DNA of 64,000 nucleotides from Saccostrea echinata (Eukaryota). The notes under the pieces were generated by a model. The model worked only from the letters and a program-made list of their open reading frames with translations, ran no database searches and was not told where the DNA came from. Below, in pieces: positions 876-43,880 of the stretch. Numbering within the stretch: the first letter of the stretch is position 1; each line of letters starts with the position of its first letter. The translations under genes and the position numbers were made by a program. The DNA lies in contig NW_026889803.1 of the NCBI RefSeq assembly GCF_033153115.1, positions 14,508,001 to 14,572,000 of the forward strand. Direction: 5' to 3'.

Positions 876-1437
876 ATCTCGTTATAAAGAGATAATTATC
901 TCGTTATAGCGAGATAACCAACTCGTTAAAACGAGATAACTAACTCGTTAAAACGAGATATTAACTCATTATAACGAGATAACTAACTCGTTATAACGAT
1001 ATAATTATCTCATTATAACGAGATAACTAGCTCGTTATAACGAGATAACTAACTCGTTATAACGATTTTACTAACTCGTTATAGCGAGATAACTTACTCG
1101 TTATAACGAGATATTAACTCATTATAACGAGATAACTAACTCGTTATAACGATATAATTATCTCATTATAACGAGATAACTAGCTCGTTATAACGAGATA
1201 ACTAACTCGTTATAACGATTTTACTAACTCGTTATAGCGAGATAACTTACTCGTTATAACGAGATACTAACTCGCTATAACGAGATAACTAACTCGTTAT
1301 AACGAGATAATTATCACGTTATAACGAGATAACTAACTCGTAATACCGAAATACTAAGTCGTTATACCGAGATACTAACTCGTTATAACGAGATACTAAC
1401 TCGTTATTACGAGATAATTATCTCGTTATAACGAGTT
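876..1437. repeat. Minisatellite of ~26 x 21-22 bp units (CTCGTTATAACGAGATAACTAA), each with a 14-bp palindrome; probably the internal array of a non-autonomous DNA element
   Basis: Unit repeats directly visible; core CTCGTTATAACGAG is self-complementary; 955-1107 and 1108-1260 are identical 153-bp (7-unit) blocks. Confidence 0.95.
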
Positions 1438-3488
1438 AATTTTTTTTTTTTTTGTCTTGTCAAAAATGAGCCTATCCGGCTTTCGTACTGAATAGATTGC
1501 AATGAATGTTAAAAATAAGGTCTTTTATCCTATATAAAAAGAAGTCAAACAACTTCTCGCAAAGAAATGCATGGATCTCCTTTCATGCTAATTCATAAGC
1601 GTGTCGCTTAAAATCGATTAACTTCCGTAACGATTTTGTTTTAAATTTCACGCTTATAATGCAGATTTCAAAAAGAACTGAAACTTATCTGAAAGTGACC
1701 ACGGAACCTTATATCATCGATTCTAGTTGCGAGTCAGCTTTTTTAGACGATTACATTATCGACATAACAAAATGATTTAGACAAAAACATTTGTCTCTCT
1801 TAAAAATTTAACTTTCGTAACGGTAATTCAGGAAAATTTTTGCATTATAGGTATAATTTTTTTTATTATTTTGGGAGCGAAATGCTTCATACTTTTGTTT
1901 AATATCCTAAAACAGACTTTGATTTTAACTATTGAAGAGAATTTTAACTTTTATTGCTGGGAATTAACTTCCGTATTGATATTTTTCCCCAAAAATTAAT
2001 TTAAATTCGGATTCATGCGAGACTTCATGAATCATACTTTAGCGTTCTTTACTGAACATCAGAAACAAAAAATTAGTCAAATTCAGCTTTATTTAAAAAA
2101 TAATAAGGCTTGATCAAGCATTAACTTCCGTAACATTACCTTAAAATCAATGGTATCTTGAAATTGTTGTAAAAAGGTAACGATATTAGATTTGTGTACA
2201 ATTCTTTGTTTTCAAGTTCACTGATATGTCCTTTAGAGAATTATGATGTTCATTTTGCCATTTGAAACAATTAATTTTTTTTCATGTTTTTTACTCTGAA
2301 TTGGTCCATTTATCGTAGAATGGCTGTTAAACGATGAAGGCGAGGAAGACGTAAATTGGAGGAAGGAGTATTTCCTCTGAAAAACAAAACAACTGATTCC
2401 CACATTCCCTTGCAGGCAAATAATTCAAAAACTTTTTTGGACGCGGGGGGGGGGGGGGGGGAGATGGAAGGCTTATATAAGTCAAAAAGTGGGGGGGGGG
2501 GGGTTATCTATATCTGTAAGGAAGACTATTTTTAAGGGAGGGTTGTAACACACCAAAACAAAACAAAAAAAAAACAAAACAAAAAACCCCACAAAATAAA
2601 AACTTTAAGTAGGATCTTGGGTAACATTTGTTGGTACATGCACGTTTACTAGAAATATTACTGATCGTATTTACATTTTTTTTTTTCTTTACAGAAAACA
2701 TTTTTCTGAAACACCCTCCTTTATAATTAGAATTTACTTCATTACACTCTTTGATTTCAGACCAGATATGAATTTATTATTTGAAATACTAACATAAGAG
2801 GCCCATGGTCATGTACTCACCTGACATGTGCATTTTATGCTCAGTTTTATACATGTATATACATATCTTATGTAAATTACAGAATAACTTTTTTAGCTTC
2901 TTCACTACCCAGGTACAAGGAAATTAGCTTACATTGAAAGGCAAACACTCTAGTTTTAATTTGGTACTACTTAGTGTTTATTCTGAAACCTTTCTCTTAT
3001 TGCAAATTTTCCTCTTGGATAAAAATTTCATTGTATTAAATCCATTAATATTATTGCATGGTGTGTCATTCATCGGTTTATTAGCATTTGATTTGCTATG
3101 AGGGAGCAAGAAATTGTTGGTGGGATTGGTTTGCGTTTTTTAAACAAGAGGCCCCTTGACTACAAACTTACATGTCATTGTCACCTTGGCACTGCTGTTC
3201 TACAGAAAATTTAAAAAAAAACAACAAAAAAAAAAAACGATACCTCTTTATCCATATTAAAAAGGTTCATGACATATTGTGGAATAATTAAATTCGTTTA
3301 TTTCATTAAAATAAATTTTACTTGTTTGCGGCATGTAATTTTGTGAGTTACTCGTTTAAACGGTAAATTCAATGAATCAATGTTTACAAAATAAACATTC
3401 TTGGGCATGTAAAATTCGTGGTTAAGGGTTACTCAAGGAATCCACGAAAATTGGTCCTCCGTGAACGATGATATTCCACAGTAACTGA

Positions 3489-3521
<33 letters not shown>

Positions 3522-3865
3522 CTGAGGTGTCAAATGTTTGATGATGAGGCCATCTTTAAAAAATTGTTTCCTTTCTCCCGATCAACTGACTAAAATGGCC
3601 CTACTCAAAATTTTATACAACCTCCAGGTAATAATAATTTGTTTTTTCTTTTTTATTCCTGAATTTTCTCATCCAGTCAATATGTGTTGAAATTTTGTAT
3701 GAAAAAAAAAATCTCCCACCTACCTAAGAACCCAAATTTTTTTTACCCTGAGTCAGGAGAGGGCAAACAAAAATTACACGTCTTTTAAACATATGCATGG
3801 CCTGACCAAAAAAATAAAATTAAGTACATGTACATAAAACCTTCATAAACTTCTGAAGAATATAT

Positions 3866-4622
3866 TGTTACGTTCCGATAAGTTTACCTGTGAAATTCGG
3901 ATTAACTGTTGTTGACAAGTTCCGAATAAACGGACCCTGAACCCGATGTATATAAACTACTAAAATATTTGTCAATGAACAATGAACGAAAGAATTGAAC
4001 AATGATTTATTATTTGAACTTTATCAATTTGATTTATGTATTGTAATTACAAAGCGTTATGTTGTATATGTTCTATATAGGTACAACGTTATTAAGTAAT
4101 TTTAGTGGTCAAAACCCGCTAACTTACAAATTAGATATTGATTGTGACGTTATTGGTATCTGACGTTTATACGTCATCATAACAACTTTTGTCTATAAAA
4201 GACAGCTGTTTTGTGTTTAGAAGTCAGTCTGCATTGGGTTGCGACTCCGTATACTTCGGGTGTAAGACAGTGGTATGTACAAACAGTACCAAGTCTATGT
4301 ATACGAAATCATTAGTGAAGAGTCATTCAGAGTAGAAACGTCCTGGATTGACCATTGGTTCGTCATCTTTGTATTAACCAAATAACGTTGTACCATTGAA
4401 TAATTGAACCATTTGATCGTCTTAATAAATATCATAAACTTTACAACGTGTTATTCGTCACGGTTCTAGTGCAGATATTATAGTAGACCAAAAATTGGTC
4501 ATTATTCCGATTGTATATAAACTTTGTGGATAACCATTTCAACCTTGACCAGTTACCAGAAACCAATAGCGGCCCACGATTAACTGATTAAGTAATAACC
4601 TTATACCCTCGGTTTCGTTACA
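3866..4622 (+). repeat. 5' LTR (757 bp)
   Basis: Starts TGTTACG, ends CGTTACA; TATAAAA at 4194-4200 preceded by three ACGT (CRE-like) cores; AATAAA at 4424-4429; no mismatch to the 3' LTR seen by eye. Confidence 0.97.
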
Positions 4623-4623
4623 T

Positions 4624-4641
4624 TGGTGGCAGCGGTGGGAT
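4624..4641 (+). other. Primer-binding site, tRNA-Leu type
   Basis: TGGTGGCAGCGGTGGGAT 1 nt after the LTR; complementary to the ...ATCCCACCGCTGCCA-CCA 3' end of animal tRNA-Leu (AAG/TAG family). Confidence 0.88.
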
Positions 4642-4679
4642 CCGCTGTTTAAGAAAATTGTGACACTTAAAAAAAAATA

Positions 4680-6011
4680 ATGATGTCGAGGAACGACGAA
4701 GTTATGGAGGAAAATGACCATATTTCAGGACCACAAGAGCATCAATTTATCGAAGGTACTCCAAGCAGAGAAGTGCTTTTGCGGGTTAATAACAACGACC
4801 AAATAGGAGATGGCAGCGGAATAAATTCATGTACACAAGACAGTTTACAAACAATTCTAAATGAATTAAAAACTTTGAAGTCGCAAATGAATTTATTACA
4901 AAATCAAGTGAGACCAACATGTGCTGACAGCCAACATGTAGACCAAAACAATGTGCGATTTTGTACCAATACCACGTCTGAAGAGGACCAAATACTGAAA
5001 CAACATCGACCATATAGAAATACATCTCTACAAAATTCATATGACGAATCTCGTGATTATGAAGATTCAAGAACAAGTTGGTCGAACCCGATGGTATCAC
5101 GCAGCTTTACTAACAACGCTAGAACCAACGAATTTCAGCCGACCATGCGCAGCTTTGAGTACGATGTACCAAATTATGGTCACACAAGACAAGTCCATGA
5201 CCACAGATTCAGGCGAACACCAGAACCAAAAGGGAGAAAACCAGCAACATTTGATGGTGCCATGAACTGGAACGACTACATAGTTCATTTTGACATGATC
5301 GCCCAATTAAACTACTGGGATGAGGAAACAAAGGCATTAGAGTTGGCTACTAGTCTACGCGGCCCGGCATTAAGCGTGTTGAGTGATCTACGACCAGAAT
5401 ATCGATATAATTTTCGCCACCTTGTTTCCGCACTTTCAGCGAGATTTGACCCAGAAAATCAAACAGAGGTATACAAGACACAACTAAAGAGCCGAATACG
5501 GAAGAAAAACGAAACTATCACAGAATTAATGCAAGACATAAAGCGACTCGTGAGGATGTCGTACCCGAACGCACCCTTAGGTTTCCGTGACCAAATAACT
5601 AAAGATTCGATCATCGAAAGTTTAAATGACCAAGAAATGGAATGGGCAGTGTTTCAAGGAAGACCTAAAAACCTAGAAGATGCAGTGCGACTGGCATTGG
5701 AATTTGAGGCCTTTCAACAAGCACGGGGGAGGCAAAATAAAGTTGCAGTACGTATGCAGAGAGAGGAACCAATGTACATAGACGGAAACGAGGATTATAC
5801 ACATCAAGTAGCTATGATCAGTCAAAACAAAGATAAGAAATTTTACAAGAAAGGTCCCTGTTTCTACTGCAAGAAAGATGGTCACATCAAAAGTGAATGT
5901 AGATTGCTACAACGACACCTCAAAGACGAAAAACAGAGAAACCAAAGAAAACCAGATTACGCGGAAAACGTGACGACCAAGGAACCCGAGAACCAGGGAA
6001 ACGCACTGTAG
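4680..6011 (+). CDS. gag: Gag (443 aa): N-terminal coiled coil/low-complexity region, retrotransposon capsid, CCHC zinc knuckle
   Basis: KPATFDG..W..Y..HF...AQLN.W capsid motif; CFYCKKDGHIKSEC knuckle; starts just after the PBS. Confidence 0.93.
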   Translation: MMSRNDEVMEENDHISGPQEHQFIEGTPSREVLLRVNNNDQIGDGSGINSCTQDSLQTILNELKTLKSQMNLLQNQVRPTCADSQHVDQNNVRFCTNTTSEEDQILKQHRPYRNTSLQNSYDESRDYEDSRTSWSNPMVSRSFTNNARTNEFQPTMRSFEYDVPNYGHTRQVHDHRFRRTPEPKGRKPATFDGAMNWNDYIVHFDMIAQLNYWDEETKALELATSLRGPALSVLSDLRPEYRYNFRHLVSALSARFDPENQTEVYKTQLKSRIRKKNETITELMQDIKRLVRMSYPNAPLGFRDQITKDSIIESLNDQEMEWAVFQGRPKNLEDAVRLALEFEAFQQARGRQNKVAVRMQREEPMYIDGNEDYTHQVAMISQNKDKKFYKKGPCFYCKKDGHIKSECRLLQRHLKDEKQRNQRKPDYAENVTTKEPENQGNAL

Positions 6012-6055
6012 TTGACGTCGGCGGCCTAACGTCAACTACACAACAGAAAGGGCCA
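5996..6055 (+). other. -1 programmed ribosomal frameshift signal (G GGA AAC + stem-loop/pseudoknot)
   Basis: Slippery heptamer at 5996-6002 in the correct gag phase; perfect 12-bp stem 6007-6018/6029-6040; -1 frame open from 6002 into pol. Confidence 0.88.
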
Positions 6056-7957
6056 CATGTTTTTGAAATAAAGGGTTTCAATAATAACTCATTAACAATT
6101 GATGTGTTTGTTAACAATGTTAAAATTAACTGTATTATTGACACTGGCTCAGCTATCACAGTTATTCACCCAAAGAAATATTACGAGATAGATAGATGTG
6201 TACGACCTAAATTGTCACCAAACCATAATAACTTACGAATGGCAAACGGTGAACTAGTGGTACCAGAAGGTCAGACAATACTTCAGATTCGTGTCAATGG
6301 GGAAATTATACAACATAGAGTGATCGTCGCTGACGTTGAAGCACAGATGATCTTGGGTTTTGATTTTCTTAAAGAGCATAACTGTCAGTTAAATTTGGGT
6401 GAAGGAACTCTTATCTTGGGAAACAAGAAATTATCATGTGACCTTAACATTGAACAAAGTCATGTGTTCCAAATTTCCGTACAAGGAGCTTTACTACATG
6501 ATAATAGTGATGGACTAAATCATCAACTATGTGAACCTTGTGATAAGAAGGAGATAAACGACCAGACCAAAGAGGACGATGATAATCTAGTATTAAAGTT
6601 AAAAGAAGACCAAACCGACACTCGAAATTGGTACATGACAAAGACAAAAGAAGACCTACAAAAGGAGCAGAATGCAGATCCAATATTAGCGAAAATAATA
6701 AAGTGGAAGACAGAGGACAACAGACCAAATTGGCAGATAATAGCAAACGAACCAAAAGAGCTAAAGACATATTGGTCACAATGGAATCGACTGACATTAA
6801 GGAATGGAGTACTCTTCAGGACATGGGAAGAAAATGAGCAAACGTTTTACCAGATGGTGGTACCAAAAGCACGTGTAAAAGAAATACTTAAGTTGTTACA
6901 TCACAATCCTACGGGTGGACATTTGGGAATCTCCAAAACTACCGAGAAAATAAGAGAAAGGTTCTACTGGGCATCTTACAAAAACGATGTTGAGAAGCAT
7001 ATCAGAGGTTGTACCTTTTGTGAAGCAAGGAAGAATACAGCAAGTGCAGCCAGAGGAAAACTGGGTCAGTATTTAGTTAGGAAACCACTGGAACGAGTGG
7101 CCATTGACATCCTTGGTCCTTTACCACGGACTAAGAAGGGTAACAAGTATGTTGTTATCATTTCGGATTATTTCACCAGATGGATAAAAACTTATCCGGT
7201 CAAAAACCAAGAGGCAATAACCATTGCAAAGGTTTTTGTAGATGAATTTATTTCAAGGTATGGAGTCCCACTCCAGGTTCATACTGGCCAAGGCAAACAG
7301 TTTGAGTCGAAGTTGTTTCAAGACTTGTGTAAGATGTTACAAATAAAGAAAAGAAGAAAAACCCCATTCAATCTGAAGAGTGATGACCTAGTAGAGAGAT
7401 TCAATCGAACGCTAGAAGATATGATAAGCAAGTATGTACAACCTAACCAAAAGAATTGGGACGAAGTTTTGCCATTTCTGATGCTTGCCTACCGATCATC
7501 AGTTCAAGAGACCACAGGATACAGTCCAGCAAGATTAAACTCTGGAACAGAGATAAAAGTACCTATTGACCTTGTTTATGGTCACAATCTATGGGAAACT
7601 TGTCCTGAAATCTGCCATAAGTTCGTCGACAAGATGAAAACCAACTTAGAGGACATCCATGAGAAAGCCAGCAGAAAAATGATACTCGCGAACGAGAACC
7701 AGAAACGAAAATATGACACCAAGGCAAACCAGATTCAGTACACCCCAGGACAACATGTGTGGATTGCATCAAAATCAAGGACCAAAGGAAGATGTCCCAA
7801 ACTTCAGGTTCATTGGAATGGACCCTATGTAGTGTTACGTGCTGTGTCCGATTTGATATACAAAGTGAAAAAGTCTAAAGCCGAGAAACCAAAATATGTG
7901 CATCATGACCAGATGAAGCTGTTCCGTTGTGAAGCAGATGAGAATCTATCTCTGTAA
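6002..7957 (+). CDS. pol: Internally deleted Pol: aspartic protease fused in frame to a degenerate integrase; expressed by -1 frameshift
   Basis: IIDTGS (D at 6140); LHHNPTGGH...CTFC zinc finger; AIDILGP (D at 7106), HTGQG (expected D replaced by G at 7286), VERFN (E at 7394, 35-residue spacing); WNGPY module. Confidence 0.92.
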   Translation, partial: RTVVDVGGLTSTTQQKGPHVFEIKGFNNNSLTIDVFVNNVKINCIIDTGSAITVIHPKKYYEIDRCVRPKLSPNHNNLRMANGELVVPEGQTILQIRVNGEIIQHRVIVADVEAQMILGFDFLKEHNCQLNLGEGTLILGNKKLSCDLNIEQSHVFQISVQGALLHDNSDGLNHQLCEPCDKKEINDQTKEDDDNLVLKLKEDQTDTRNWYMTKTKEDLQKEQNADPILAKIIKWKTEDNRPNWQIIANEPKELKTYWSQWNRLTLRNGVLFRTWEENEQTFYQMVVPKARVKEILKLLHHNPTGGHLGISKTTEKIRERFYWASYKNDVEKHIRGCTFCEARKNTASAARGKLGQYLVRKPLERVAIDILGPLPRTKKGNKYVVIISDYFTRWIKTYPVKNQEAITIAKVFVDEFISRYGVPLQVHTGQGKQFESKLFQDLCKMLQIKKRRKTPFNLKSDDLVERFNRTLEDMISKYVQPNQKNWDEVLPFLMLAYRSSVQETTGYSPARLNSGTEIKVPIDLVYGHNLWETCPEICHKFVDKMKTNLEDIHEKASRKMILANENQKRKYDTKANQIQYTPGQHVWIASKSRTKGRCPKLQVHWNGPYVVLRAVSDLIYKVKKSKAEKPKYVHHDQMKLFRCEADENLSL

Positions 7958-8028
7958 CGTGCATCTCTAAAAGATATAAAAAAAATTCTTGATTGACTAA
8001 GCACCCCGAAACGAGGACGTTTCGACTT

Positions 8029-8038
8029 AAGAGGGGGG
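8029..8038 (+). other. Polypurine tract
   Basis: AAGAGGGGGG 3 nt before the 3' LTR. Confidence 0.85.
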
Positions 8039-8041
8039 TAT

Positions 8042-8798
8042 TGTTACGTTCCGATAAGTTTACCTGTGAAATTCGGATTAACTGTTGTTGACAAGTTCCG
8101 AATAAACGGACCCTGAACCCGATGTATATAAACTACTAAAATATTTGTCAATGAACAATGAACGAAAGAATTGAACAATGATTTATTATTTGAACTTTAT
8201 CAATTTGATTTATGTATTGTAATTACAAAGCGTTATGTTGTATATGTTCTATATAGGTACAACGTTATTAAGTAATTTTAGTGGTCAAAACCCGCTAACT
8301 TACAAATTAGATATTGATTGTGACGTTATTGGTATCTGACGTTTATACGTCATCATAACAACTTTTGTCTATAAAAGACAGCTGTTTTGTGTTTAGAAGT
8401 CAGTCTGCATTGGGTTGCGACTCCGTATACTTCGGGTGTAAGACAGTGGTATGTACAAACAGTACCAAGTCTATGTATACGAAATCATTAGTGAAGAGTC
8501 ATTCAGAGTAGAAACGTCCTGGATTGACCATTGGTTCGTCATCTTTGTATTAACCAAATAACGTTGTACCATTGAATAATTGAACCATTTGATCGTCTTA
8601 ATAAATATCATAAACTTTACAACGTGTTATTCGTCACGGTTCTAGTGCAGATATTATAGTAGACCAAAAATTGGTCATTATTCCGATTGTATATAAACTT
8701 TGTGGATAACCATTTCAACCTTGACCAGTTACCAGAAACCAATAGCGGCCCACGATTAACTGATTAAGTAATAACCTTATACCCTCGGTTTCGTTACA
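8042..8798 (+). repeat. 3' LTR (757 bp)
   Basis: Direct repeat of 3866-4622, followed by TSD ATAT. Confidence 0.97.
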
Positions 8799-10975
8799 AT
8801 ATCAAATACCAGTATAAAGGGAATGTTTTTATTTACAAATTTAATTTACATGTGCAAAACATGTGATTGATTCCAGGTATATCACAGTGTATACAAATCT
8901 TTGTAAAAAGAGGGAATTGTGCAAAAAAAATAAGCTTGAGTCACTTTGAGTCTGTCTTGTTATCTTTCCTCAGATCTTCCATTTTCTTCATTAAACTCTC
9001 CCATGACTGTTTGTTCACCCTTGGCACCTTCAATCATAAAATTAAAAACTATTACATATTTTCATACCTGTTCATTATGGTTTACAAATATAATTATGCG
9101 AGATGGTCTGCTCGTGAAAATTTCATTCTCGATTATATTTTCTTCAGTATAGTTTATATACAATAATACCAGGAATTTGTGAAAATTTTGTCTCCAATCT
9201 AAATACCAAATACCTAGCTATCTCGCGAAAATAAGGTTTCACGAAATTTTTGTGACCTACAGTACCCTAAGTACTTACATCATAATTTTGGTCAATATAA
9301 ATCCCTATCACCACACCTGCACCAACAATTCCCTGAAAAAAAAGGAAGTAAAATAAGCAATTATTTACAAATCCTCAGTACTGTCAGTCTGGTGGATAAT
9401 CATAATTGTAGATTGATTTTTTGACATCAATCTAATATAAGATTGTGTGATATGAGAGAACTGTGAAAATTGCAAACTTAATTAACAAATGCTTTACATC
9501 TTCTCAAACGCAGCAAGACAAGTGAAGTAGGAAGACAACAATGCTGCACATATTTCAGGTACAGCTTTTTCTTTAAGTCACAAACCATATGTAGAAATTA
9601 TGGTACTGAATGGTTAAATTGTGCCTCTTTATTATAATAAAGAAATAATATTGTCAAAGCAATAAATGACATTTACTTTTTTACACAGCACACCTTTGTG
9701 AAGAGTATAAAAAGTAACAGTCACATTGGTATTGATCATACAGTGGGCTGGGCCTCTTCAGATTTGTATAGCTAGATTATGAAAAATACAGCTTGGGACC
9801 TAAAGACTAAACAAAAGGCATTAAGTGGGCCTAGAAAGGAGAGAAAAGTTGTGCACAACTCAAACTGCAAATATATTCTTCTGAAAGTTACAACAAGACT
9901 GACAATTTAATTTCCTGGATAGACCTGAAAGTTCAATGTCACAAATAGGCCCCCCACTGAGAGCCAAACAAACCTCGAAACAAATCAGTTTTCTTTCAGT
10001 GTACGAAGTTCCATTACCTTAACAAGTTAAACTCAAACAATATTCTAATTTCAAATTACTGATTCAGATTTTTCTTTATCGTCTAGACTCTAGTTTACTA
10101 TATGTTGTTTTCGGCAGTTTTCTCACACAGAGAACCTTTTGCACTGCATCCAGAACGTTTGACCTAATCAGCTAATAGTACAGTAGACTTACTTTAACTA
10201 AAAGAACAAAATTGGAAGAGATGTAATAGTTGAATTACAATTAAGCAGGTGTTAACTTAAAAATTTACCAACCAATAGCTTCGCTAATTTAAAAACCATG
10301 TCAGCTTCAAAATTTTTCTCACTTTTAGTCAAAGCGAAAGTACATTGTCGGCGTTCTGGCGAGATTAACTCAAATTCAAACTGATTCGTTCCTTATGAGG
10401 TTCCAGTGGAATTGACAAAGTTTCCCAACCGACGTGCAAAACCGAAACAAAATAACATTTATAAGATTATTTTTAATTTAGAAAAATTACAATTTAAGTT
10501 AATTTTTAGGTTACAGTTAAGTAATGTAATTTCATGCAACATATATTTATTAGTAAATGTACAAGAATCATCACCAAGACCAATTTAATCAGAAAACGGG
10601 CGGAATTTTTTCTCCCTTCCGCATTTGTAATATTATGATTCGCCCTATTATGATTATCATTCGAAAAACAAAGTTTTCATTAACGAATCACCTGATTTCC
10701 ATACATTTAATTTCTTTAATATTGCGCACGTTAATGATAACAATAAAAATTAATTTGGATACATTTGTAATGCATTCTCCAAATAAATAGTTGTACTTCT
10801 ACTAAAGTGACTATAGCTAGAATATAATTAATAATGACCCGTCATCTTTCATTTGATTTAGAATTGAATTTTCATTAAAAACAAACAATAACACATTTTT
10901 TTAAATAATCAAGAAAAAAATATTTTATTGATACATATACACCGATAGAGAAACAATATAAATTTCATATTCCAA

Positions 10976-13845: not shown

Positions 13846-16408
13846 TATATTAATTTTATTTCCTGCACTTATCATGACCTCCTGTTGCTGTCAGTGATTT
13901 TGAAATTCTCTGGTACAGACTTGATAAAATACTTGAGTTTCGGATTTAAAAAAAATCCCAACTATAGGAAGTTTTGTCATTAAATATATAGTAAAACTGT
14001 CAACGTTGGATAGGTATAAAAGTACGGATTGCTGAGAATGCTATTTTGGCATTTGCAACAAAATAAAATTAATAGATAAGAATAAAAACACAGTGCCATC
14101 CTAAATTTTACCGGCACTTGTTTTATATTAAGACAAGGAAAATAACTCTCTCTCATTGTGTCGAATTCAGTAGTATGGATTACGTATCCTTCTTCTCGAG
14201 TTCCTATTATAAATTGTATTTTATACAAGTATAAGCGTTGGTATCTAAGGCTATATTACATGAAATTCAATTTCTCCAAAAATATTTTCATTTGTGTTCT
14301 TTTATAGGGTAAAGATGTCAACTTTTTACAATACTGTTTCAAGGACTTCAAAGAACCTTGAATCATATATTAAGATGATGAAATGAAATTGTTGCACGAA
14401 AAGATTTCATTTTCAAGCTTCTTTTGAGATTTTTTTAATTAAATAATGATTTTAAGAGTTATCCTTCATAGCTGAGGAGCTGTTGAATCCACAGAACACT
14501 GGGATACATGTACTTCAATAATCAATACGATCAGCACACGACCCTCCTGTTCTGAAGAAGATGTTTTTTTTTCTTTACACATGCATTATTTAAATTTCGA
14601 TCTCTGATTTCGACCCAACTTTATCCCCAGGGCTCATAAATTAAAAAAAAAAAAAAGAATCCACGCAACTTACAATTAAGAATGTTTATTAATATGGTTT
14701 AATGTGGTTTTGTCACTCTTGAAATTTTTTCCTATATACTTTCTTATAAAACTCTGTTTCACCAAGACTGTAAATTGATCTTTTTCATACTCTGCAATAT
14801 ACTGTTGAAGTTTTTTGTTTGTTTGTTTCTGGTTTGTTTGTTTGTAAGCTTTTTGGGTTTGTTTTTTGTTGATTTTGGTTTTGTTTGTTTGTTTGTTTGT
14901 TTTGGGGGGGGGGGAGGGTAGGGGGTTGTTTTGTTTCGTTTTTATAGAAACATTTTTAATTGCCAACAAAATCCTGGATAAATCTTTGCTGCATATCTGT
15001 TTTGGCACCCTAGCTTATATTTTACCTATCTTTATTTTACTCATATTGGTGTTTTCCCAGGTTCCTACATATATGTGAATTGATTAATAACTGGAAATGG
15101 GGAAACGATTGATTGATACATTTGTTGCTGGATTGAGGAGCGAAACGCCTAAAAGTTCCACCTAGTATAGATTGAAAGAAACTAAAGGTAAAATTTTTAT
15201 GAATCGAACTAAACTTGGAGAAGCAGTAGGAAGACAATAATCTTTTTTTTATCTGATGACTCTTCGTGCCCTAACAAATTTCACACTCAAAAAAATCTGT
15301 GTAACATCATGCCAACATTTTGTCTGGCATTAAAAAGCTACACGTGAGAACTGACAAATAGAGTTTTCTGTCATGTTGTAAATTTAAAATTACCGGGTGA
15401 CAGTAAATACAAAATTTACAACATGACATTTCTGTTGATGCTGCAGATTATTTTAATAGATAAATATATATGCAATGAACTGAATGAAATTGAATGACAT
15501 AATCTAATGGCGGGGACCAAAGACTTCCAAACCAAATTGTTTTTTACTAAGCTAGTTAACTTTTGTATTTTCGACAGTGATGAATCTCAATTTCCCATAC
15601 TGAAACTGTAAATAATTAATTTAAATAAATTGATGAATTTCCCATGAGATGGATTTAACCTATATTAAGGTATTATAGGATCCATGCTTCGACGGACCCT
15701 CCCCCCACCCCCATTTCCTGATACCTGGCCATAATCTGACATCATGCATATATTTGAAAATCCACTGTAAAATAAGGTACAATCCTATGCCCCCCCCCCC
15801 CCGTTTAAGGAAAATTAATTCCTGAATTGCTAGTATAACCGATAATTAGAATGACAATCCTTAAATCACAATTTTCGGTGGAATCTCAGGATGATTTTGC
15901 ACTTATAATATTTATTGTGTATATATTTCTTCATCAAATAACATGCTGACTGTACACTGGACCATATCCGTCACACTACCAAAAATTTTGGGTTACAGTA
16001 TGGTATGCAAGCAGCATTCAAAAGTGTCTTAAATTCTTTGTATTCACTCAGCATGGTTTGTATATGTACATAATTATGCAAACATCGTGAACTGGGTCTA
16101 CAACTACTATCTTGAGGCTTTATTCAGCATGTACTTGATCACACCCTCTTAAGAATTTCAAATTGCAGTCTTTTGTGCAGTTTCAAATGAATGAAAAAAA
16201 TCAATTCACTACTCTAATAAAGAAATTTTTACGAAATCGATCTAATGACAAAAGCGTCAGAGTAAGGTAAGCATGACGGGAAGGTTATCAAAATCTTGAT
16301 AAAAAGACTTTAAACATGAATTAGTAGTAGTTATCTGTGCTTGGCATATTAAAGCAGTTACGTCGTAGTTTAAAAGTTCAAGATATCCCTGACGTACAGC
16401 ACATAATT

Positions 16409-17980
16409 ATGGCGGCTTTCATGCATGTTTCTGACAACGAGGATATTAGACTGAAATGTGACACACATAATAATGACTTGCTCCCACTGTTTTGTAGGGA
16501 CTGTAATTGTCATCTCTGCGCCGACTGTGTTACACTTGATCATGCTGGACATAACATTCGTAACGTTTCGGAAGTCGTAGAATTTCATAAGCAGGAACTT
16601 CGAGAAATTCTGTGTCGTGATACATCATCACAGTTTCTTGCAAAACGTTTAAGCCATTTGCAAGAACAACAAAAATCCTTGGCCGTGCATACCGAAAGTC
16701 TGCTACGAAATGTATTAGATCGGGAGGACGAGATTATGGAGAGAGTTAAAATTTGGAGACAGGATATATTTGACAAAATTATATCATTCAGAGAAACTTG
16801 TGAGGCAAATTTGAGGGATGATCAAATTATTATATCTGCTCTACTTCAACACCATGAAAAGAGTCCACAATCAGAACCAGGAAGAACTGAATTAGAACTT
16901 TCGTATCTGTGTTTCCGAGGAAAACATCTATTAACTTCAGAACGTTGCATGACGTCTGATAAAGATATTTCTGATTTATATAGCTTTAATATCGGACCTT
17001 CTGGTGAAGACTTATATGACACTTTTGGAATATTTAGATATGGTTCAGAAGAAGAGTTGTCGTCAGATTCAGTTTCTATTAACAGCAGCAAAGAAGAAGA
17101 AAAAGAAGAATTTTGTGATTGCGAGGACATACAAGGAAAGTATCAAGTTTGCGATAAGTCAATCGAAAATATTGTACCTATGGATAGTTTGAAGTTCTTT
17201 GTCCATAGTTTGAGTAACGTATACCTCTGTTCTTTTCACGGAAGTAAGATTGATACAAAGCTAACTTTGAGCAATGTTTGGCGAATCGCCCTGATACCGT
17301 CAACAGGAGACATACTTTCAATAACGAGCAATCAGAAACAAATAAAACGCATTTCTTTTGAAAGCACAATAACAACGTTTTTAGTTACGGGAGACCTATA
17401 TGATGATGTCAATTCAGGAGGAGACCAGGCATACGCATGCGTTATGTATAAATCAGATATAAACAAAGCGAGGATGGGCTCATGCTTCGTATGCATACAC
17501 CTTTTAAATGAATTTGGAGTGATTTTGAAGACTTTCGAACGTGGTCTTGGATTTGTCTCTTGGAGGTTGTTAAAAACAAATGAAGAAAACAAATTCTATC
17601 TGTCAACCAAAAACAGAACTCAAATATTCGATGGTGTATTGGGCAAATGTACTGCAGTATACAGTGGAGCAGTTGGAAAAGATCCAGGCTTACGATTCCA
17701 TACATGTGACATGATAACCGATAGTAACAACAATGTCTTACTTGCTGTTCAAAATGACAACGCCATTCATTTATTAAACAAAGCATTAAAATTTCAGAAA
17801 CTGTTATTGACTGAAGAAGATGGGCTCCGACTGCCATCTAGTTTAGCGCTAGACAACTTTGGTTATCTCTGGGTGGGATGTGAAGATGGGCAGATACATG
17901 TTGTGAATTATCAATATTTACTGATGACAGATCGATTAGCTAGACTAAAATATAGGAGTGCTAAGGAACACATCTCCTAG
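16409..17980 (+). CDS. Intronless B-box type 2 + coiled-coil + NHL/beta-propeller protein (RING-less TRIM-like)
   Basis: CDTH...FCRDC..HLCADCV..DHAGH B-box, helical region, C-terminal NHL-like repeats (DSNNNVLLA...AIHLLN...GLRLPSSLALDNFGYLWVGC); first ATG in the ORF at 16409. Confidence 0.88.
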   Translation: MAAFMHVSDNEDIRLKCDTHNNDLLPLFCRDCNCHLCADCVTLDHAGHNIRNVSEVVEFHKQELREILCRDTSSQFLAKRLSHLQEQQKSLAVHTESLLRNVLDREDEIMERVKIWRQDIFDKIISFRETCEANLRDDQIIISALLQHHEKSPQSEPGRTELELSYLCFRGKHLLTSERCMTSDKDISDLYSFNIGPSGEDLYDTFGIFRYGSEEELSSDSVSINSSKEEEKEEFCDCEDIQGKYQVCDKSIENIVPMDSLKFFVHSLSNVYLCSFHGSKIDTKLTLSNVWRIALIPSTGDILSITSNQKQIKRISFESTITTFLVTGDLYDDVNSGGDQAYACVMYKSDINKARMGSCFVCIHLLNEFGVILKTFERGLGFVSWRLLKTNEENKFYLSTKNRTQIFDGVLGKCTAVYSGAVGKDPGLRFHTCDMITDSNNNVLLAVQNDNAIHLLNKALKFQKLLLTEEDGLRLPSSLALDNFGYLWVGCEDGQIHVVNYQYLLMTDRLARLKYRSAKEHIS

Positions 17981-42917: not shown

Positions 42918-43536
42918 TTATGCCCCCGTATCGAAGATTCGGGGATATATAGTTTTTGCCCTGTCCGTCCGTCCGTCTGTCTGTCTGTCTGTCCGCAAAA
43001 ACTTTAACATTGCTCATAACTTTTGATTGGTTGGAGCTATGGCTTTCATATTTCACATGTATAATCCTTGTGACAAGACCTTCCTTTGGATACCAACAAC
43101 TTTGACCCTTTGACCTTTGAGTTTGACCTACTTTTGAAAAACTTTAACATTGGCCATATCTTTTGAACGGTTGGTGCTAAGGCTTTCATACTTCACATGT
43201 GTATTCCTTGTGACAAGACCTTCCTTTGGATAACAACAACTGTGACCCTTTGACCTTGGAGTTTGACCTACTTTTGAAAAACTTTAACCTTGGCCATAAC
43301 TTGTGAACCGTTGGTGCTAGGGCTTTCATACTTCACATATGTAATCTTTGTGACAAGACCTTCCTTTGGATACCAACAACTTTTACCCTTTACTCTTGAC
43401 CTTGGAGTTTGACCTACTTTTAGAAAACTTTAACCTTGGCCAAAACTTTTGAACCGTTGGTGCTAGGGCTTTCATACTTCACATATATAATCCTTGTGAC
43501 AAGACCTTCCATTAAATACCAACAATTGTAATCCAT

Positions 43537-43567
<31 letters not shown>

Positions 43568-43880
43568 GAAAAACTTAAACCTTGGTCATAACTTTTGAAC
43601 GATTGGTGCTTCAGCTTTCATATTTCACCAGTATATTTCTTGTGAAAAGGCCTTTCCTTAGGCACCATTAATTTTGACCATTTGACCTTGATGTTTGACT
43701 TACTTTTGAAAAACTTTAACCTTTTCCATATCTATTCAATGGTTGCTTCTAGGGCTTTCATATTTCACAGGCATATTACCTTACTTTGGGTACCAACATA
43801 TTTGATTTGCATTTGAGAAAGTTTAAACTTTGCTATAAGTTGCCAAGCGGGGCATCAGTGTTTCACAAACACATCTTGTT
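42918..43880 (+). mobile_element. Helentron/HINE-like non-autonomous element with an internal ~120-bp satellite array
   Basis: TT start, sub-terminal IR ATGCCCC/GGGGCAT, (GTCC)n(GTCT)n microsatellite, 6-7 tandem units (TGACAAGACC...TTTGACCTACTTTTGAAAAACTTTAAC), 3' hairpin GTGTTT-CAC-AAACAC, TT end. Confidence 0.85.

What the first reader, a model, noticed from the sequence alone, without database searches (positions are those of the whole stretch)
3866..8798. Freshly inserted Gypsy element with no reverse transcriptase: a helper-dependent 'Gag + protease' retroelement lineage
Seen: LTRs with no mismatch by eye, a perfect TSD, PBS and PPT, and two fully open ORFs. Pol runs from the protease straight into the integrase, with only about 250 aa between DTG and the HHCC finger and no YxDD. 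Known: Gypsy pol order is PR-RT-RH-IN, and LTRs are identical at integration. Inference: this copy was reverse-transcribed and integrated recently using RT supplied in trans, while it still encodes its own capsid and protease. Most non-autonomous LTR elements (TRIMs, LARDs) lose all coding capacity. Keeping gag, the frameshift site and an open PR-IN fusion suggests a satellite-like element that builds or co-assembles particles and borrows enzymes. RT-less elements have been described in plants and fungi, so novelty applies to this animal lineage and must be checked.
Basis: partly seen in the sequence, partly recalled or inferred. Interest (0 to 1): 0.85.

Follow-up and report, generated by a model that had tools for sequence, protein, structure and literature searches.

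The report
Young Gypsy retroelement without reverse transcriptase
This is a very recently inserted LTR retrotransposon, probably in a bivalve genome, that has lost its reverse transcriptase, carries a damaged integrase and keeps intact capsid and protease genes, so a related element must have copied it; this lifestyle is already known from plants and mice.

Summary
Two 757-bp LTRs are 100% identical, flanked by a 4-bp ATAT duplication, with PBS, PPT, an open gag, a -1 frameshift signal and an open pol. Pol has protease and integrase but no RT or RNase H. Against four RT-bearing sister families found as database proteins (about 72-77% identical), the element lacks exactly 562 codons, in frame, between the end of PR and the start of IN.

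The second catalytic residue is Gly where 257 of 259 relatives have Asp, and two more near-invariant sites are changed. Relative-rate tests show the IN core changing about 4-9 times faster than in sister families, while gag and PR do not. The LTRs are identical, so this damage predates insertion. The copy therefore needed RT, RNase H and IN in trans.

The constraint on gag and PR alongside IN decay suggests a persisting "semi-autonomous" lineage, not a one-off deletion.

The type is known (mouse IAP 1-delta-1; wheat Sabrina/WHAM Gag-Pro elements). I rate it a new member of a known kind, of moderate interest.

The parts
3862..3865 (+). Target-site duplication, left copy (ATAT)
   Evidence: Identical to 8799-8802.
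3866..4622 (+). 5' LTR, 757 bp, TG...CA ends. TATAAAA at 4194 and AATAAA at 4424.
   Evidence: 100% identical to 8042-8798. Motifs.
4624..4642 (+). Primer binding site TGGTGGCAGCGGTGGGATC.
   Evidence: Starts 1 nt after the LTR. The 14-mer core is unique in the window, with 0 of 100 shuffles matching. The same 19-mer sits at the PBS position of another LTR element in L041. Its assignment to a tRNA-Leu 3' end is from memory only.
4680..6011 (+). gag ORF, 443 aa, with a capsid-like Retrotrans_gag domain and a CCHC zinc knuckle.
   Evidence: It deviates at 0 of 17 columns that are at least 97% conserved among 55 relatives. There is no rate acceleration.
5996..6002 (+). Candidate -1 slippery heptamer G GGA AAC in the gag/pol overlap.
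   Evidence: Read from the sequence. The pol frame is open from 5903. Gag-Pol would be about 1092 aa.
6007..6040 (+). Hairpin with a 12-bp stem, 4 nt downstream of the heptamer.
   Evidence: MFE fold -17.6 kcal/mol, z = -1.3 against shuffles. Its function is inferred.
6104..7957 (+). pol ORF as listed, 617 aa (frame open from 5903): PR fused directly to IN.
6110..6373 (+). Aspartyl protease domain (aa 3-90, DTG at nt 6140-6148).
   Evidence: Pfam gag-asp_proteas and Asp_protease_2. It deviates at 0 of 6 columns that are at least 97% conserved among 169 relatives.
6491..6499 (+). Deletion junction (aa 130-132). PR-side homology ends at L130 and IN-side homology starts at H132. 562 codons (RT + RNase H) are missing, in frame.
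6860..7036 (+). Integrase H2C2 zinc-binding domain (aa 253-311).
   Evidence: Pfam PF17921, E = 3.7e-18. No rate acceleration.
7082..7366 (+). Integrase catalytic core (rve, aa 327-421), which is degenerate.
   Evidence: Pfam PF00665. Relative-rate tests give 18 lineage-specific changes against 2, and 19 against 5.
7286..7288 (+). Codon GGC (Gly395) at the position of the second catalytic Asp of the DDE triad.
   Evidence: The column is Asp in 257 of 259 aligned Gypsy integrases and in nearly all members of sister families A-D.
7820..7918 (+). Integrase C-terminal domain (Integrase_p58_C, aa 573-605).
8029..8038 (+). Polypurine tract AAGAGGGGGG.
   Evidence: Read from the sequence, 3 nt upstream of the 3' LTR.
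8042..8798 (+). 3' LTR, 757 bp.
   Evidence: 100% identical to the 5' LTR.
8799..8802 (+). Target-site duplication, right copy (ATAT).

Best explanation
This is a non-autonomous ("semi-autonomous") deletion derivative of a Ty3/Gypsy LTR retrotransposon, in what is probably a bivalve genome. An in-frame loss of 562 codons removed all of RT and RNase H and fused the end of the protease to the start of the integrase. The integrase core has since decayed and lacks one catalytic Asp.

The element keeps every cis signal (LTR ends, PBS, PPT, and a promoter and polyA signal in the LTR). It also keeps an intact Gag and a Gag-PR-(dead IN) frameshift product.

Proposed mechanism: its RNA is packaged into particles that contain Gag-Pol of a related autonomous element. 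That element's RT/RNase H copies the RNA and its IN inserts the cDNA, leaving a 4-bp duplication. The element's own Gag, and possibly PR, contribute to the particles.

Shown here: the anatomy, the absence of RT/RH, the IN damage, the recent insertion, and the rate asymmetry between the IN core and gag/PR. Inferred: trans-mobilisation by a helper, the contribution of its own Gag, and persistence as a multi-copy lineage.
For: - The LTRs are identical over 757 bp and flanked by a TSD, so the insertion is very recent and essentially unmutated since. The ORF contents are therefore those of the RNA template.
- There is no RT or RNase H by Pfam, by motif search, or by tblastn with a sister family's RT-RH segment.
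- Four RT-bearing sister families exist as database proteins (A: P0343/P0466; B: P0501; C: P0463; D: P0486). They are colinear with the window ORF on both sides of a 562-aa gap.
- The IN catalytic triad reads D/G/E. The window deviates at 3 of the 22 columns that are at least 97% conserved, and only 0.8% of 259 relatives deviate that often.
- Tajima relative-rate tests with outgroup C, IN core: 18 changes unique to the window lineage against 2 in A (p = 4e-4), and 19 against 5 in B (p = 0.007). The A-versus-B control gives 4 against 6.
- The same tests show no acceleration in gag (20 vs 25 and 20 vs 32) or in PR (6 vs 10 and 8 vs 9).
- Within the window lineage, gag changed less than the IN core (20/434 vs 18/169, Fisher p = 0.009). 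Family A shows the reverse.
- gag and PR deviate at none of their columns that are at least 97% conserved.
Against: - Only one copy is available. There is no second copy, solo LTR or fragment in the 64-kb window.
- No protein more than 77% identical was found in the databases.
- No helper with matching LTR ends or PBS was identified.
- The lineage inference rests on amino-acid rate asymmetry in a single sequence. Sister-family DNA was not obtainable, so dN/dS could not be computed.
- The acceleration is confined to the IN N-terminal extension and core. It is not seen in the H2C2 or C-terminal parts.
- The IN ORF is still open, which is not clearly expected after long neutral decay.
- The timing of the RT loss relative to the IN decay is unknown.
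Confidence: 0.62

Rival explanations
1. This is a one-off "dead on arrival" copy. The RT-RH segment was lost during the very replication cycle that produced this insertion, by RT template switching or by reverse transcription of a cryptically spliced genomic RNA. The RNA came from an element that still carried RT, so there is no RT-less lineage.
For: Only a single copy is seen. No database relative shares the junction among about 100 proteins of sister families. Dead-on-arrival insertions are reported as frequent among new LTR element copies (PMC9744471, section 2.2). Similar PR-IN ORFs (P0013, P0175) arose independently in distant Gypsy lineages, so such deletions recur.
Against: The template already carried a damaged IN core, with Gly at a catalytic Asp position plus 15-17 further lineage-specific changes. 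It was therefore already dependent on trans functions. gag was meanwhile kept at the normal rate, which implies selection across several rounds of copying. However, these data do not date the RT loss itself.
Confidence: 0.25
2. A full-length element inserted here and then lost its RT-RH segment through a genomic deletion at this locus.
For: Internal deletions of integrated elements are common. This cannot be excluded from one copy.
Against: Zero substitutions in 1514 bp of paired LTR sequence leave very little time. The deletion is exactly in frame and falls at domain borders. The damaged IN would still require trans-integration.
Confidence: 0.06
3. The deletion is an assembly artefact. A collapse or chimeric join between PR and IN of a full-length element was created during assembly.
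For: Repeats are prone to misassembly, and no reads were available to check this.
Against: The junction preserves the reading frame and sits between domains. There is no repeat or N at the junction. Contiguous PR-IN ORFs of the same design exist in unrelated assemblies (P0013, P0175).
Confidence: 0.04
4. The excess change in IN comes from cDNA or RNA editing (APOBEC- or ADAR-like) in one cycle, not from relaxed selection over time.
For: Lineage-private changes are rich in G>A (18, against 4 C>T). Editing of minus-strand cDNA is expected to be strongest near the 3' end of the element. That expectation rests on general knowledge of retroviral replication.
Against: After correcting for non-synonymous opportunity, the asymmetry is not significant (p = 0.08). 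Only 2 of 18 G>A sites have a following G, and 4-5 are CpG sites. The IN C-terminal part, which is nearest the PPT, shows no excess. The change at the catalytic position is A>G.
Confidence: 0.05

Closest known systems
Mouse IAP 1-delta-1 (I-delta-1) elements
   Same: An animal LTR element with a large in-frame internal deletion that creates a fusion ORF. It is non-autonomous, needs proteins in trans from full-length relatives, and is still highly active in making new insertions (PMC6466679).
   Different: IAP is a class II ERV (betaretrovirus-like), not Ty3/Gypsy. Its 1.9-kb deletion removes parts of gag and pol and yields a gag-pol fusion. Here gag is untouched and RT-RH is removed cleanly. 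For IAP the copy number and the helper are documented; here they are not.
Wheat RLG_Sabrina_SA and RLG_WHAM ("semi-autonomous" Gypsy families)
   Same: Ty3/Gypsy elements that keep an intact GAG-protease ORF, lack RT, and are thought to contribute Gag while borrowing enzymes from an autonomous partner (PMC9744471).
   Different: These are plant families with thousands of copies, and they lack IN altogether. The element here is from an animal and still carries an open, though degenerate, IN.
RLG_Quinta / RLG_Cereba pair (Triticeae centromeres)
   Same: A non-autonomous derivative that keeps Gag and shares the PBS and LTR termini with its autonomous partner (PMC11302176).
   Different: Quinta has no PR or IN, and its partner is identified. 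Here the partner is unknown.
LARDs, TRIMs, ETn, VL30
   Same: They are mobilised in trans through retained LTR, PBS and PPT signals (PMC6466679 for ETn and VL30).
   Different: They have no coding capacity. This element has 3.2 kb of open gag and pol.

Membership tests
Ty3/Gypsy (Metaviridae) LTR retrotransposon | Direct LTRs with TG...CA ends and a short target-site duplication | tested here: met
   757-bp LTRs at 100% identity, TG...CA ends, 4-bp ATAT TSD.
Ty3/Gypsy (Metaviridae) LTR retrotransposon | PBS next to the 5' LTR and PPT next to the 3' LTR | tested here: met
   PBS at 4624-4642 and PPT at 8029-8038. The same PBS occurs in another element, L041.
Ty3/Gypsy (Metaviridae) LTR retrotransposon | Gag with a capsid-like domain and a CCHC knuckle | tested here: met
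   Retrotrans_gag E = 8.7e-6. zf-CCHC scores 18.6 bits, just under the Pfam cut-off, but the CX2CX4HX4C pattern is present.
Ty3/Gypsy (Metaviridae) LTR retrotransposon | Pol domain order PR-RT-RNaseH-IN | tested here: not met
   PR and IN are present in that order. RT and RNase H are absent. It is a deletion derivative of the family, as colinearity with full-length relatives A-D shows.
Ty3/Gypsy (Metaviridae) LTR retrotransposon | Integrase with an H2C2 finger and a DDE catalytic triad | tested here: not met
   H2C2 is present. The triad reads D335/G395/E431, and the middle column is Asp in 257 of 259 relatives.
Non-autonomous, partly coding ("semi-autonomous") LTR retrotransposon | Lacks at least one enzyme needed for its own replication while keeping the cis signals | tested here: met
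   No RT/RH and a damaged IN. LTRs, PBS and PPT are intact.
Non-autonomous, partly coding ("semi-autonomous") LTR retrotransposon | Evidence that the defective form itself transposed | tested here: met
   Identical LTRs and a TSD around a copy whose defects must predate insertion. For the RT loss itself the timing is inferred.
Non-autonomous, partly coding ("semi-autonomous") LTR retrotransposon | A retained ORF (Gag) under purifying selection | tested here: inconclusive
   This is supported at the amino-acid level. gag shows no acceleration and changed more slowly than the IN core in this lineage. dN/dS could not be computed because no relative DNA was available.
Non-autonomous, partly coding ("semi-autonomous") LTR retrotransposon | Several copies sharing the same deletion junction | not testable with these tools
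   The host genome was not searchable.
Non-autonomous, partly coding ("semi-autonomous") LTR retrotransposon | An autonomous partner with matching PBS and LTR termini | not testable with these tools
   Sister families A-D are known only as proteins at no more than 77% identity. Their LTRs and PBS could not be retrieved.
LARD / TRIM | No protein-coding capacity in the internal region | tested here: not met
   gag (443 aa) and pol (617+ aa) are open and fill the internal region.

The most novel reading that the evidence does not exclude
This copy belongs to an established Gag-plus-protease "satellite" lineage of Gypsy elements in a bivalve. The lineage has propagated for many cycles on a helper's RT and IN. 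Selection keeps its own capsid and protease, while its integrase decays as a still-translated relic. That would make it an animal counterpart of the wheat Sabrina/WHAM system. Independent PR-IN derivatives in other Gypsy lineages (P0013, P0175) would hint that loss of exactly the RT-RH module is a recurrent route to parasitism among retroelements.
Probability: 0.45. Interest if true: 0.55.

Novelty: new member of a known kind. Interest (0 to 1): 0.36.

Why it matters
If the lineage reading is right, this would be a tractable animal example of an LTR element that parasitises another while still making its own capsid. It would give a system for asking how Gag specificity, RNA packaging and helper choice co-evolve. 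It could also help explain which LTR elements are currently active in bivalve genomes, where LTR elements are low in copy number and little studied (PMC10294476). If it is a one-off deletion, it is an ordinary dead-on-arrival insertion. Its only interest would then be that it proves a compatible, recently active Gypsy helper exists in this genome.

Tried and rejected
As a result there was no DNA for sister families, so no dN/dS, no LTR or PBS comparison with a possible helper, and no microhomology analysis at the junction.
- A scan of viral contigs with pol found no relatives.
- A scan of metagenome contigs with the independent PR-IN protein P0013 returned 80 Gypsy loci. None has PR directly next to IN, and P0013's own contig was not returned. 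I took none of these loci to be human, and they were not analysed further, apart from the PBS pattern search over them and a look at L041.
- Exact look-ups showed that gag and pol of this copy are not in the protein collection, although a neighbouring host gene is. The lack of close hits therefore says nothing about copy number.
- P0121, the top hit of the representative search, is a tandem-fused gene model and not a PR-IN protein.
- The apparent contiguous alignment of P0001 and P0478 across the junction is a spurious extension of RNase H tail over PR tail.
- The Gly at the catalytic position also appears in P0344, but it is private to that copy because its cluster mates have Asp. It is not a clade trait.
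- An editing explanation for the IN changes was not supported.
- A template switch at the shared "FKI" peptide was rejected, because PR-side homology continues 6-7 residues past it.
- The tRNA identity of the PBS could not be verified. No tRNA gene with that 3' end exists in the window or the loci.
Full report
**1. Observation**

The element spans 3866-8798. Its two LTRs (3866-4622 and 8042-8798, 757 bp each) are identical at every position. They begin with TG and end with CA.

- The flanks carry ATAT on both sides (3862-3865 and 8799-8802). This is a perfect but short duplication in AT-rich DNA.
- One nucleotide after the 5' LTR lies TGGTGGCAGCGGTGGGATC (4624-4642). Its core is unique in the window and absent from 100 shuffles. 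The identical 19-mer occupies the PBS position of another LTR element in a metagenome contig (L041). From memory it matches the 3' end of a metazoan tRNA-Leu, but I could not verify this.
- A purine tract, AAGAGGGGGG (8029-8038), lies 3 nt before the 3' LTR.
- The LTR holds TATAAAA at 4194 and AATAAA at 4424.
- The window contains no N.

**2. Coding content**

- gag (4680-6011, 443 aa) has a Retrotrans_gag domain and a CCHC knuckle.
- The pol frame (-1 relative to gag) is open from 5903 to 7957.
- In the overlap there is a G GGA AAC heptamer in the right register (5996-6002). Four nucleotides later comes a hairpin with a 12-bp stem (6007-6040). This layout is classical for -1 frameshifting, although the hairpin energy is not unusual against shuffles (z = -1.3). 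Gag-Pol would be about 1092 aa.
- Pfam finds a retropepsin-like protease (aa 3-90, DTG at 13-15), Integrase_H2C2 (253-311), rve (327-421) and Integrase_p58_C (573-605). It finds no RVT_1 or RNase H.
- No [YF]xDD motif exists in any frame of the element.
- The gag and pol ORFs fill the internal region, so there is no room for a hidden RT.

**3. What is missing, and where**

Protein searches and cluster look-ups gave four RT-bearing sister families. They are known only as unnamed proteins from Logan and ENA assemblies.

| Family | pol | gag |
|---|---|---|
| A | P0343/P0466 (1150 aa; P0466 seen on 32 contigs) | P0284 |
| B | P0501/P0496 | P0530/P0283 |
| C | P0463/P0461/P0344 (1175 aa) | P0285 |
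| D | P0486 (1203 aa) | P0288 |

- gag and pol were paired by shared contig lengths.
- Identity of the window element to A and B is about 72% in gag, 71-77% in PR and 75% in IN.
- Both sides of the window pol are colinear with these proteins. PR-side homology runs to L130 (nt 6493). IN-side homology starts at H132 (nt 6497), at the HxNSDGL motif that closes RNase H.
- The 562 residues between these points in A and in B are absent, and the loss is in frame.
- tblastn with that 562-aa segment finds nothing in the whole window.
- Named relatives at lower identity are bivalves: Crassostrea angulata, Mytilus coruscus, M. edulis, Sinanodonta woodiana and Pinctada imbricata.
- A neighbouring intronless B-box gene is an annotated NCBI protein on a 69.7-Mb contig.
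- The host is therefore probably a bivalve with an annotated chromosome-level assembly in which this element's ORFs were not annotated.

**4. The integrase is damaged**

- In an alignment of 259 Gypsy integrases, the window sequence has Gly (codon GGC, 7286-7288) where 257 have the second catalytic Asp. The first Asp and the Glu are present.
- It also deviates at two further columns that are more than 98% conserved, aa 424 and 428.
- Deviating at 3 or more of the 22 columns that are at least 97% conserved is seen in only 0.8% of the other sequences.
- Nearly all members of families A-D have the usual residues. One copy, P0344, privately shares the Gly.
- By contrast, gag deviates at 0 of 17 and PR at 0 of 6 of their columns that are at least 97% conserved.

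**5. Rate asymmetry**

Tajima relative-rate tests used C or D as outgroup. The counts below are with outgroup C and give changes unique to each lineage.

| Region | Window vs A | Window vs B | Control A vs B |
|---|---|---|---|
| IN core (aa 312-480) | 18 vs 2 (p = 4e-4) | 19 vs 5 (p = 0.007) | 4 vs 6 |
| IN N-terminal extension | 15 vs 5 | 15 vs 8 | 5 vs 8 |
| gag | 20 vs 25 | 20 vs 32 | 19 vs 26 |
| PR | 6 vs 10 | 8 vs 9 | 5 vs 2 |

- With outgroup D the IN core gives 15 vs 3 and 15 vs 2.
- The H2C2 and C-terminal parts of IN show no acceleration.
- At sites conserved in the other three sequences, the window differs at 11.7% in the IN core (A 0.8%, B 3.2%). In the structured part of gag it differs at only 5.8% (A 5.2%, B 9.3%).
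- Within the window lineage, gag changed less than the IN core (Fisher p = 0.009). Family A shows the opposite pattern.
- If gag had changed at the IN-core rate, about 46 unique changes would be expected. Only 20 are seen (Poisson p about 1e-5).

**6. Interpretation**

The LTRs carry no substitution, so essentially all these differences were already in the RNA that was copied. That RNA encoded no RT or RNase H, or lost them in that same cycle, and it encoded an integrase lacking a catalytic residue. Reverse transcription and integration were therefore done by proteins of another element.

The combination of a fast-changing IN core with normally constrained gag and PR is what selection would produce in a lineage that propagates through a helper's enzymes while profiting from its own Gag. 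It is not what neutral decay of a dead copy would give, because that would hit gag equally. I therefore favour a persisting "semi-autonomous" lineage (confidence about 0.6). The main rival is a one-off deletion in the last cycle, which I put at about 0.25. The data cannot date the RT loss itself.

An editing explanation for the IN changes is not supported:
- The G>A excess is not significant after correcting for opportunity (p = 0.08).
- There is no GG context among the G>A sites.
- There is no increase in changes towards the PPT.

How the deletion arose cannot be told without parental DNA. The candidates are a template switch, cryptic splicing, or a deletion in a master copy.

**7. Comparison with known systems**

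- The closest animal analogue is mouse IAP 1-delta-1. [quoted passage not shown]
- The closest analogues in coding design are the wheat Gypsy families Sabrina_SA and WHAM. They encode only GAG-protease and are called semi-autonomous (PMC9744471). The Gag-only Quinta, mobilised by Cereba, is similar (PMC11302176).
- A bivalve transposon survey that I read mentions no RT-less Gypsy lineage (PMC10294476).
- Two other contiguous PR-IN ORFs without RT exist in the databases: P0013 (JGI) and P0175. They are only 31-38% identical to this one, keep Asp at the second catalytic position, and have borders at nearly the same domain limits. Their closer relatives carry RT, so these are independent events.
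- This element is a new member of a known kind.

**8. Limits**

- The host genome could not be searched. Copy number, the helper, and polymorphism of the insertion are all untested.
- I took no contig to be human.
- A bench mobilisation test, and any reconstruction of a full-length partner, are listed under referred steps.

Noticed in passing
window 878-1439: A tandem array of about 26 copies of a 22-bp unit. The unit contains the palindrome CTCGTTATAACGAG, and there are higher-order periods of 131 and 153 bp.
   Followed up: no
window 16337-17980 (+): An intronless 547-aa ORF with a B-box zinc finger. Its ATG-started 523-aa form is an annotated NCBI protein on a 69.7-Mb contig. The host genome is therefore public and annotated, yet the element's ORFs are not in the protein collection.
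   Followed up: partly
window 42997-43769: A satellite-like array with period 140/286 bp, about 5 copies, 81-83% matches.
   Followed up: no
window 62692-62765 (+): A tRNA-Glu(CTC) gene, the only tRNA and the only Rfam hit in the window. It does not match the element's PBS.
   Followed up: yes
L041 2345-2363 (-): A metagenome contig (WLWD01003880.1) carries the identical 19-nt PBS sequence next to what looks like an LTR end of another Gypsy-type element. ARAGORN finds no tRNA there.
   Followed up: partly
proteins P0013 and P0175 (no window coordinates): Two contiguous PR-IN ORFs without RT, from other, distant Gypsy lineages. Both keep Asp at the second catalytic position, and their junctions fall at nearly the same domain borders as here. 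Loss of exactly the RT-RH module seems to recur.
   Followed up: partly
protein P0344 (family C, no window coordinates): A full-length RT-bearing relative privately carries Gly at the same catalytic Asp position as the window copy, while its cluster mates carry Asp. The same substitution has therefore arisen twice among close relatives.
   Followed up: yes
window 6501-7872: Lineage-private amino-acid changes in pol are mostly explained by G>A on the coding strand. Across gag and pol there are 18 G>A against 4 C>T. The excess is not significant after correcting for opportunity.
   Followed up: yes
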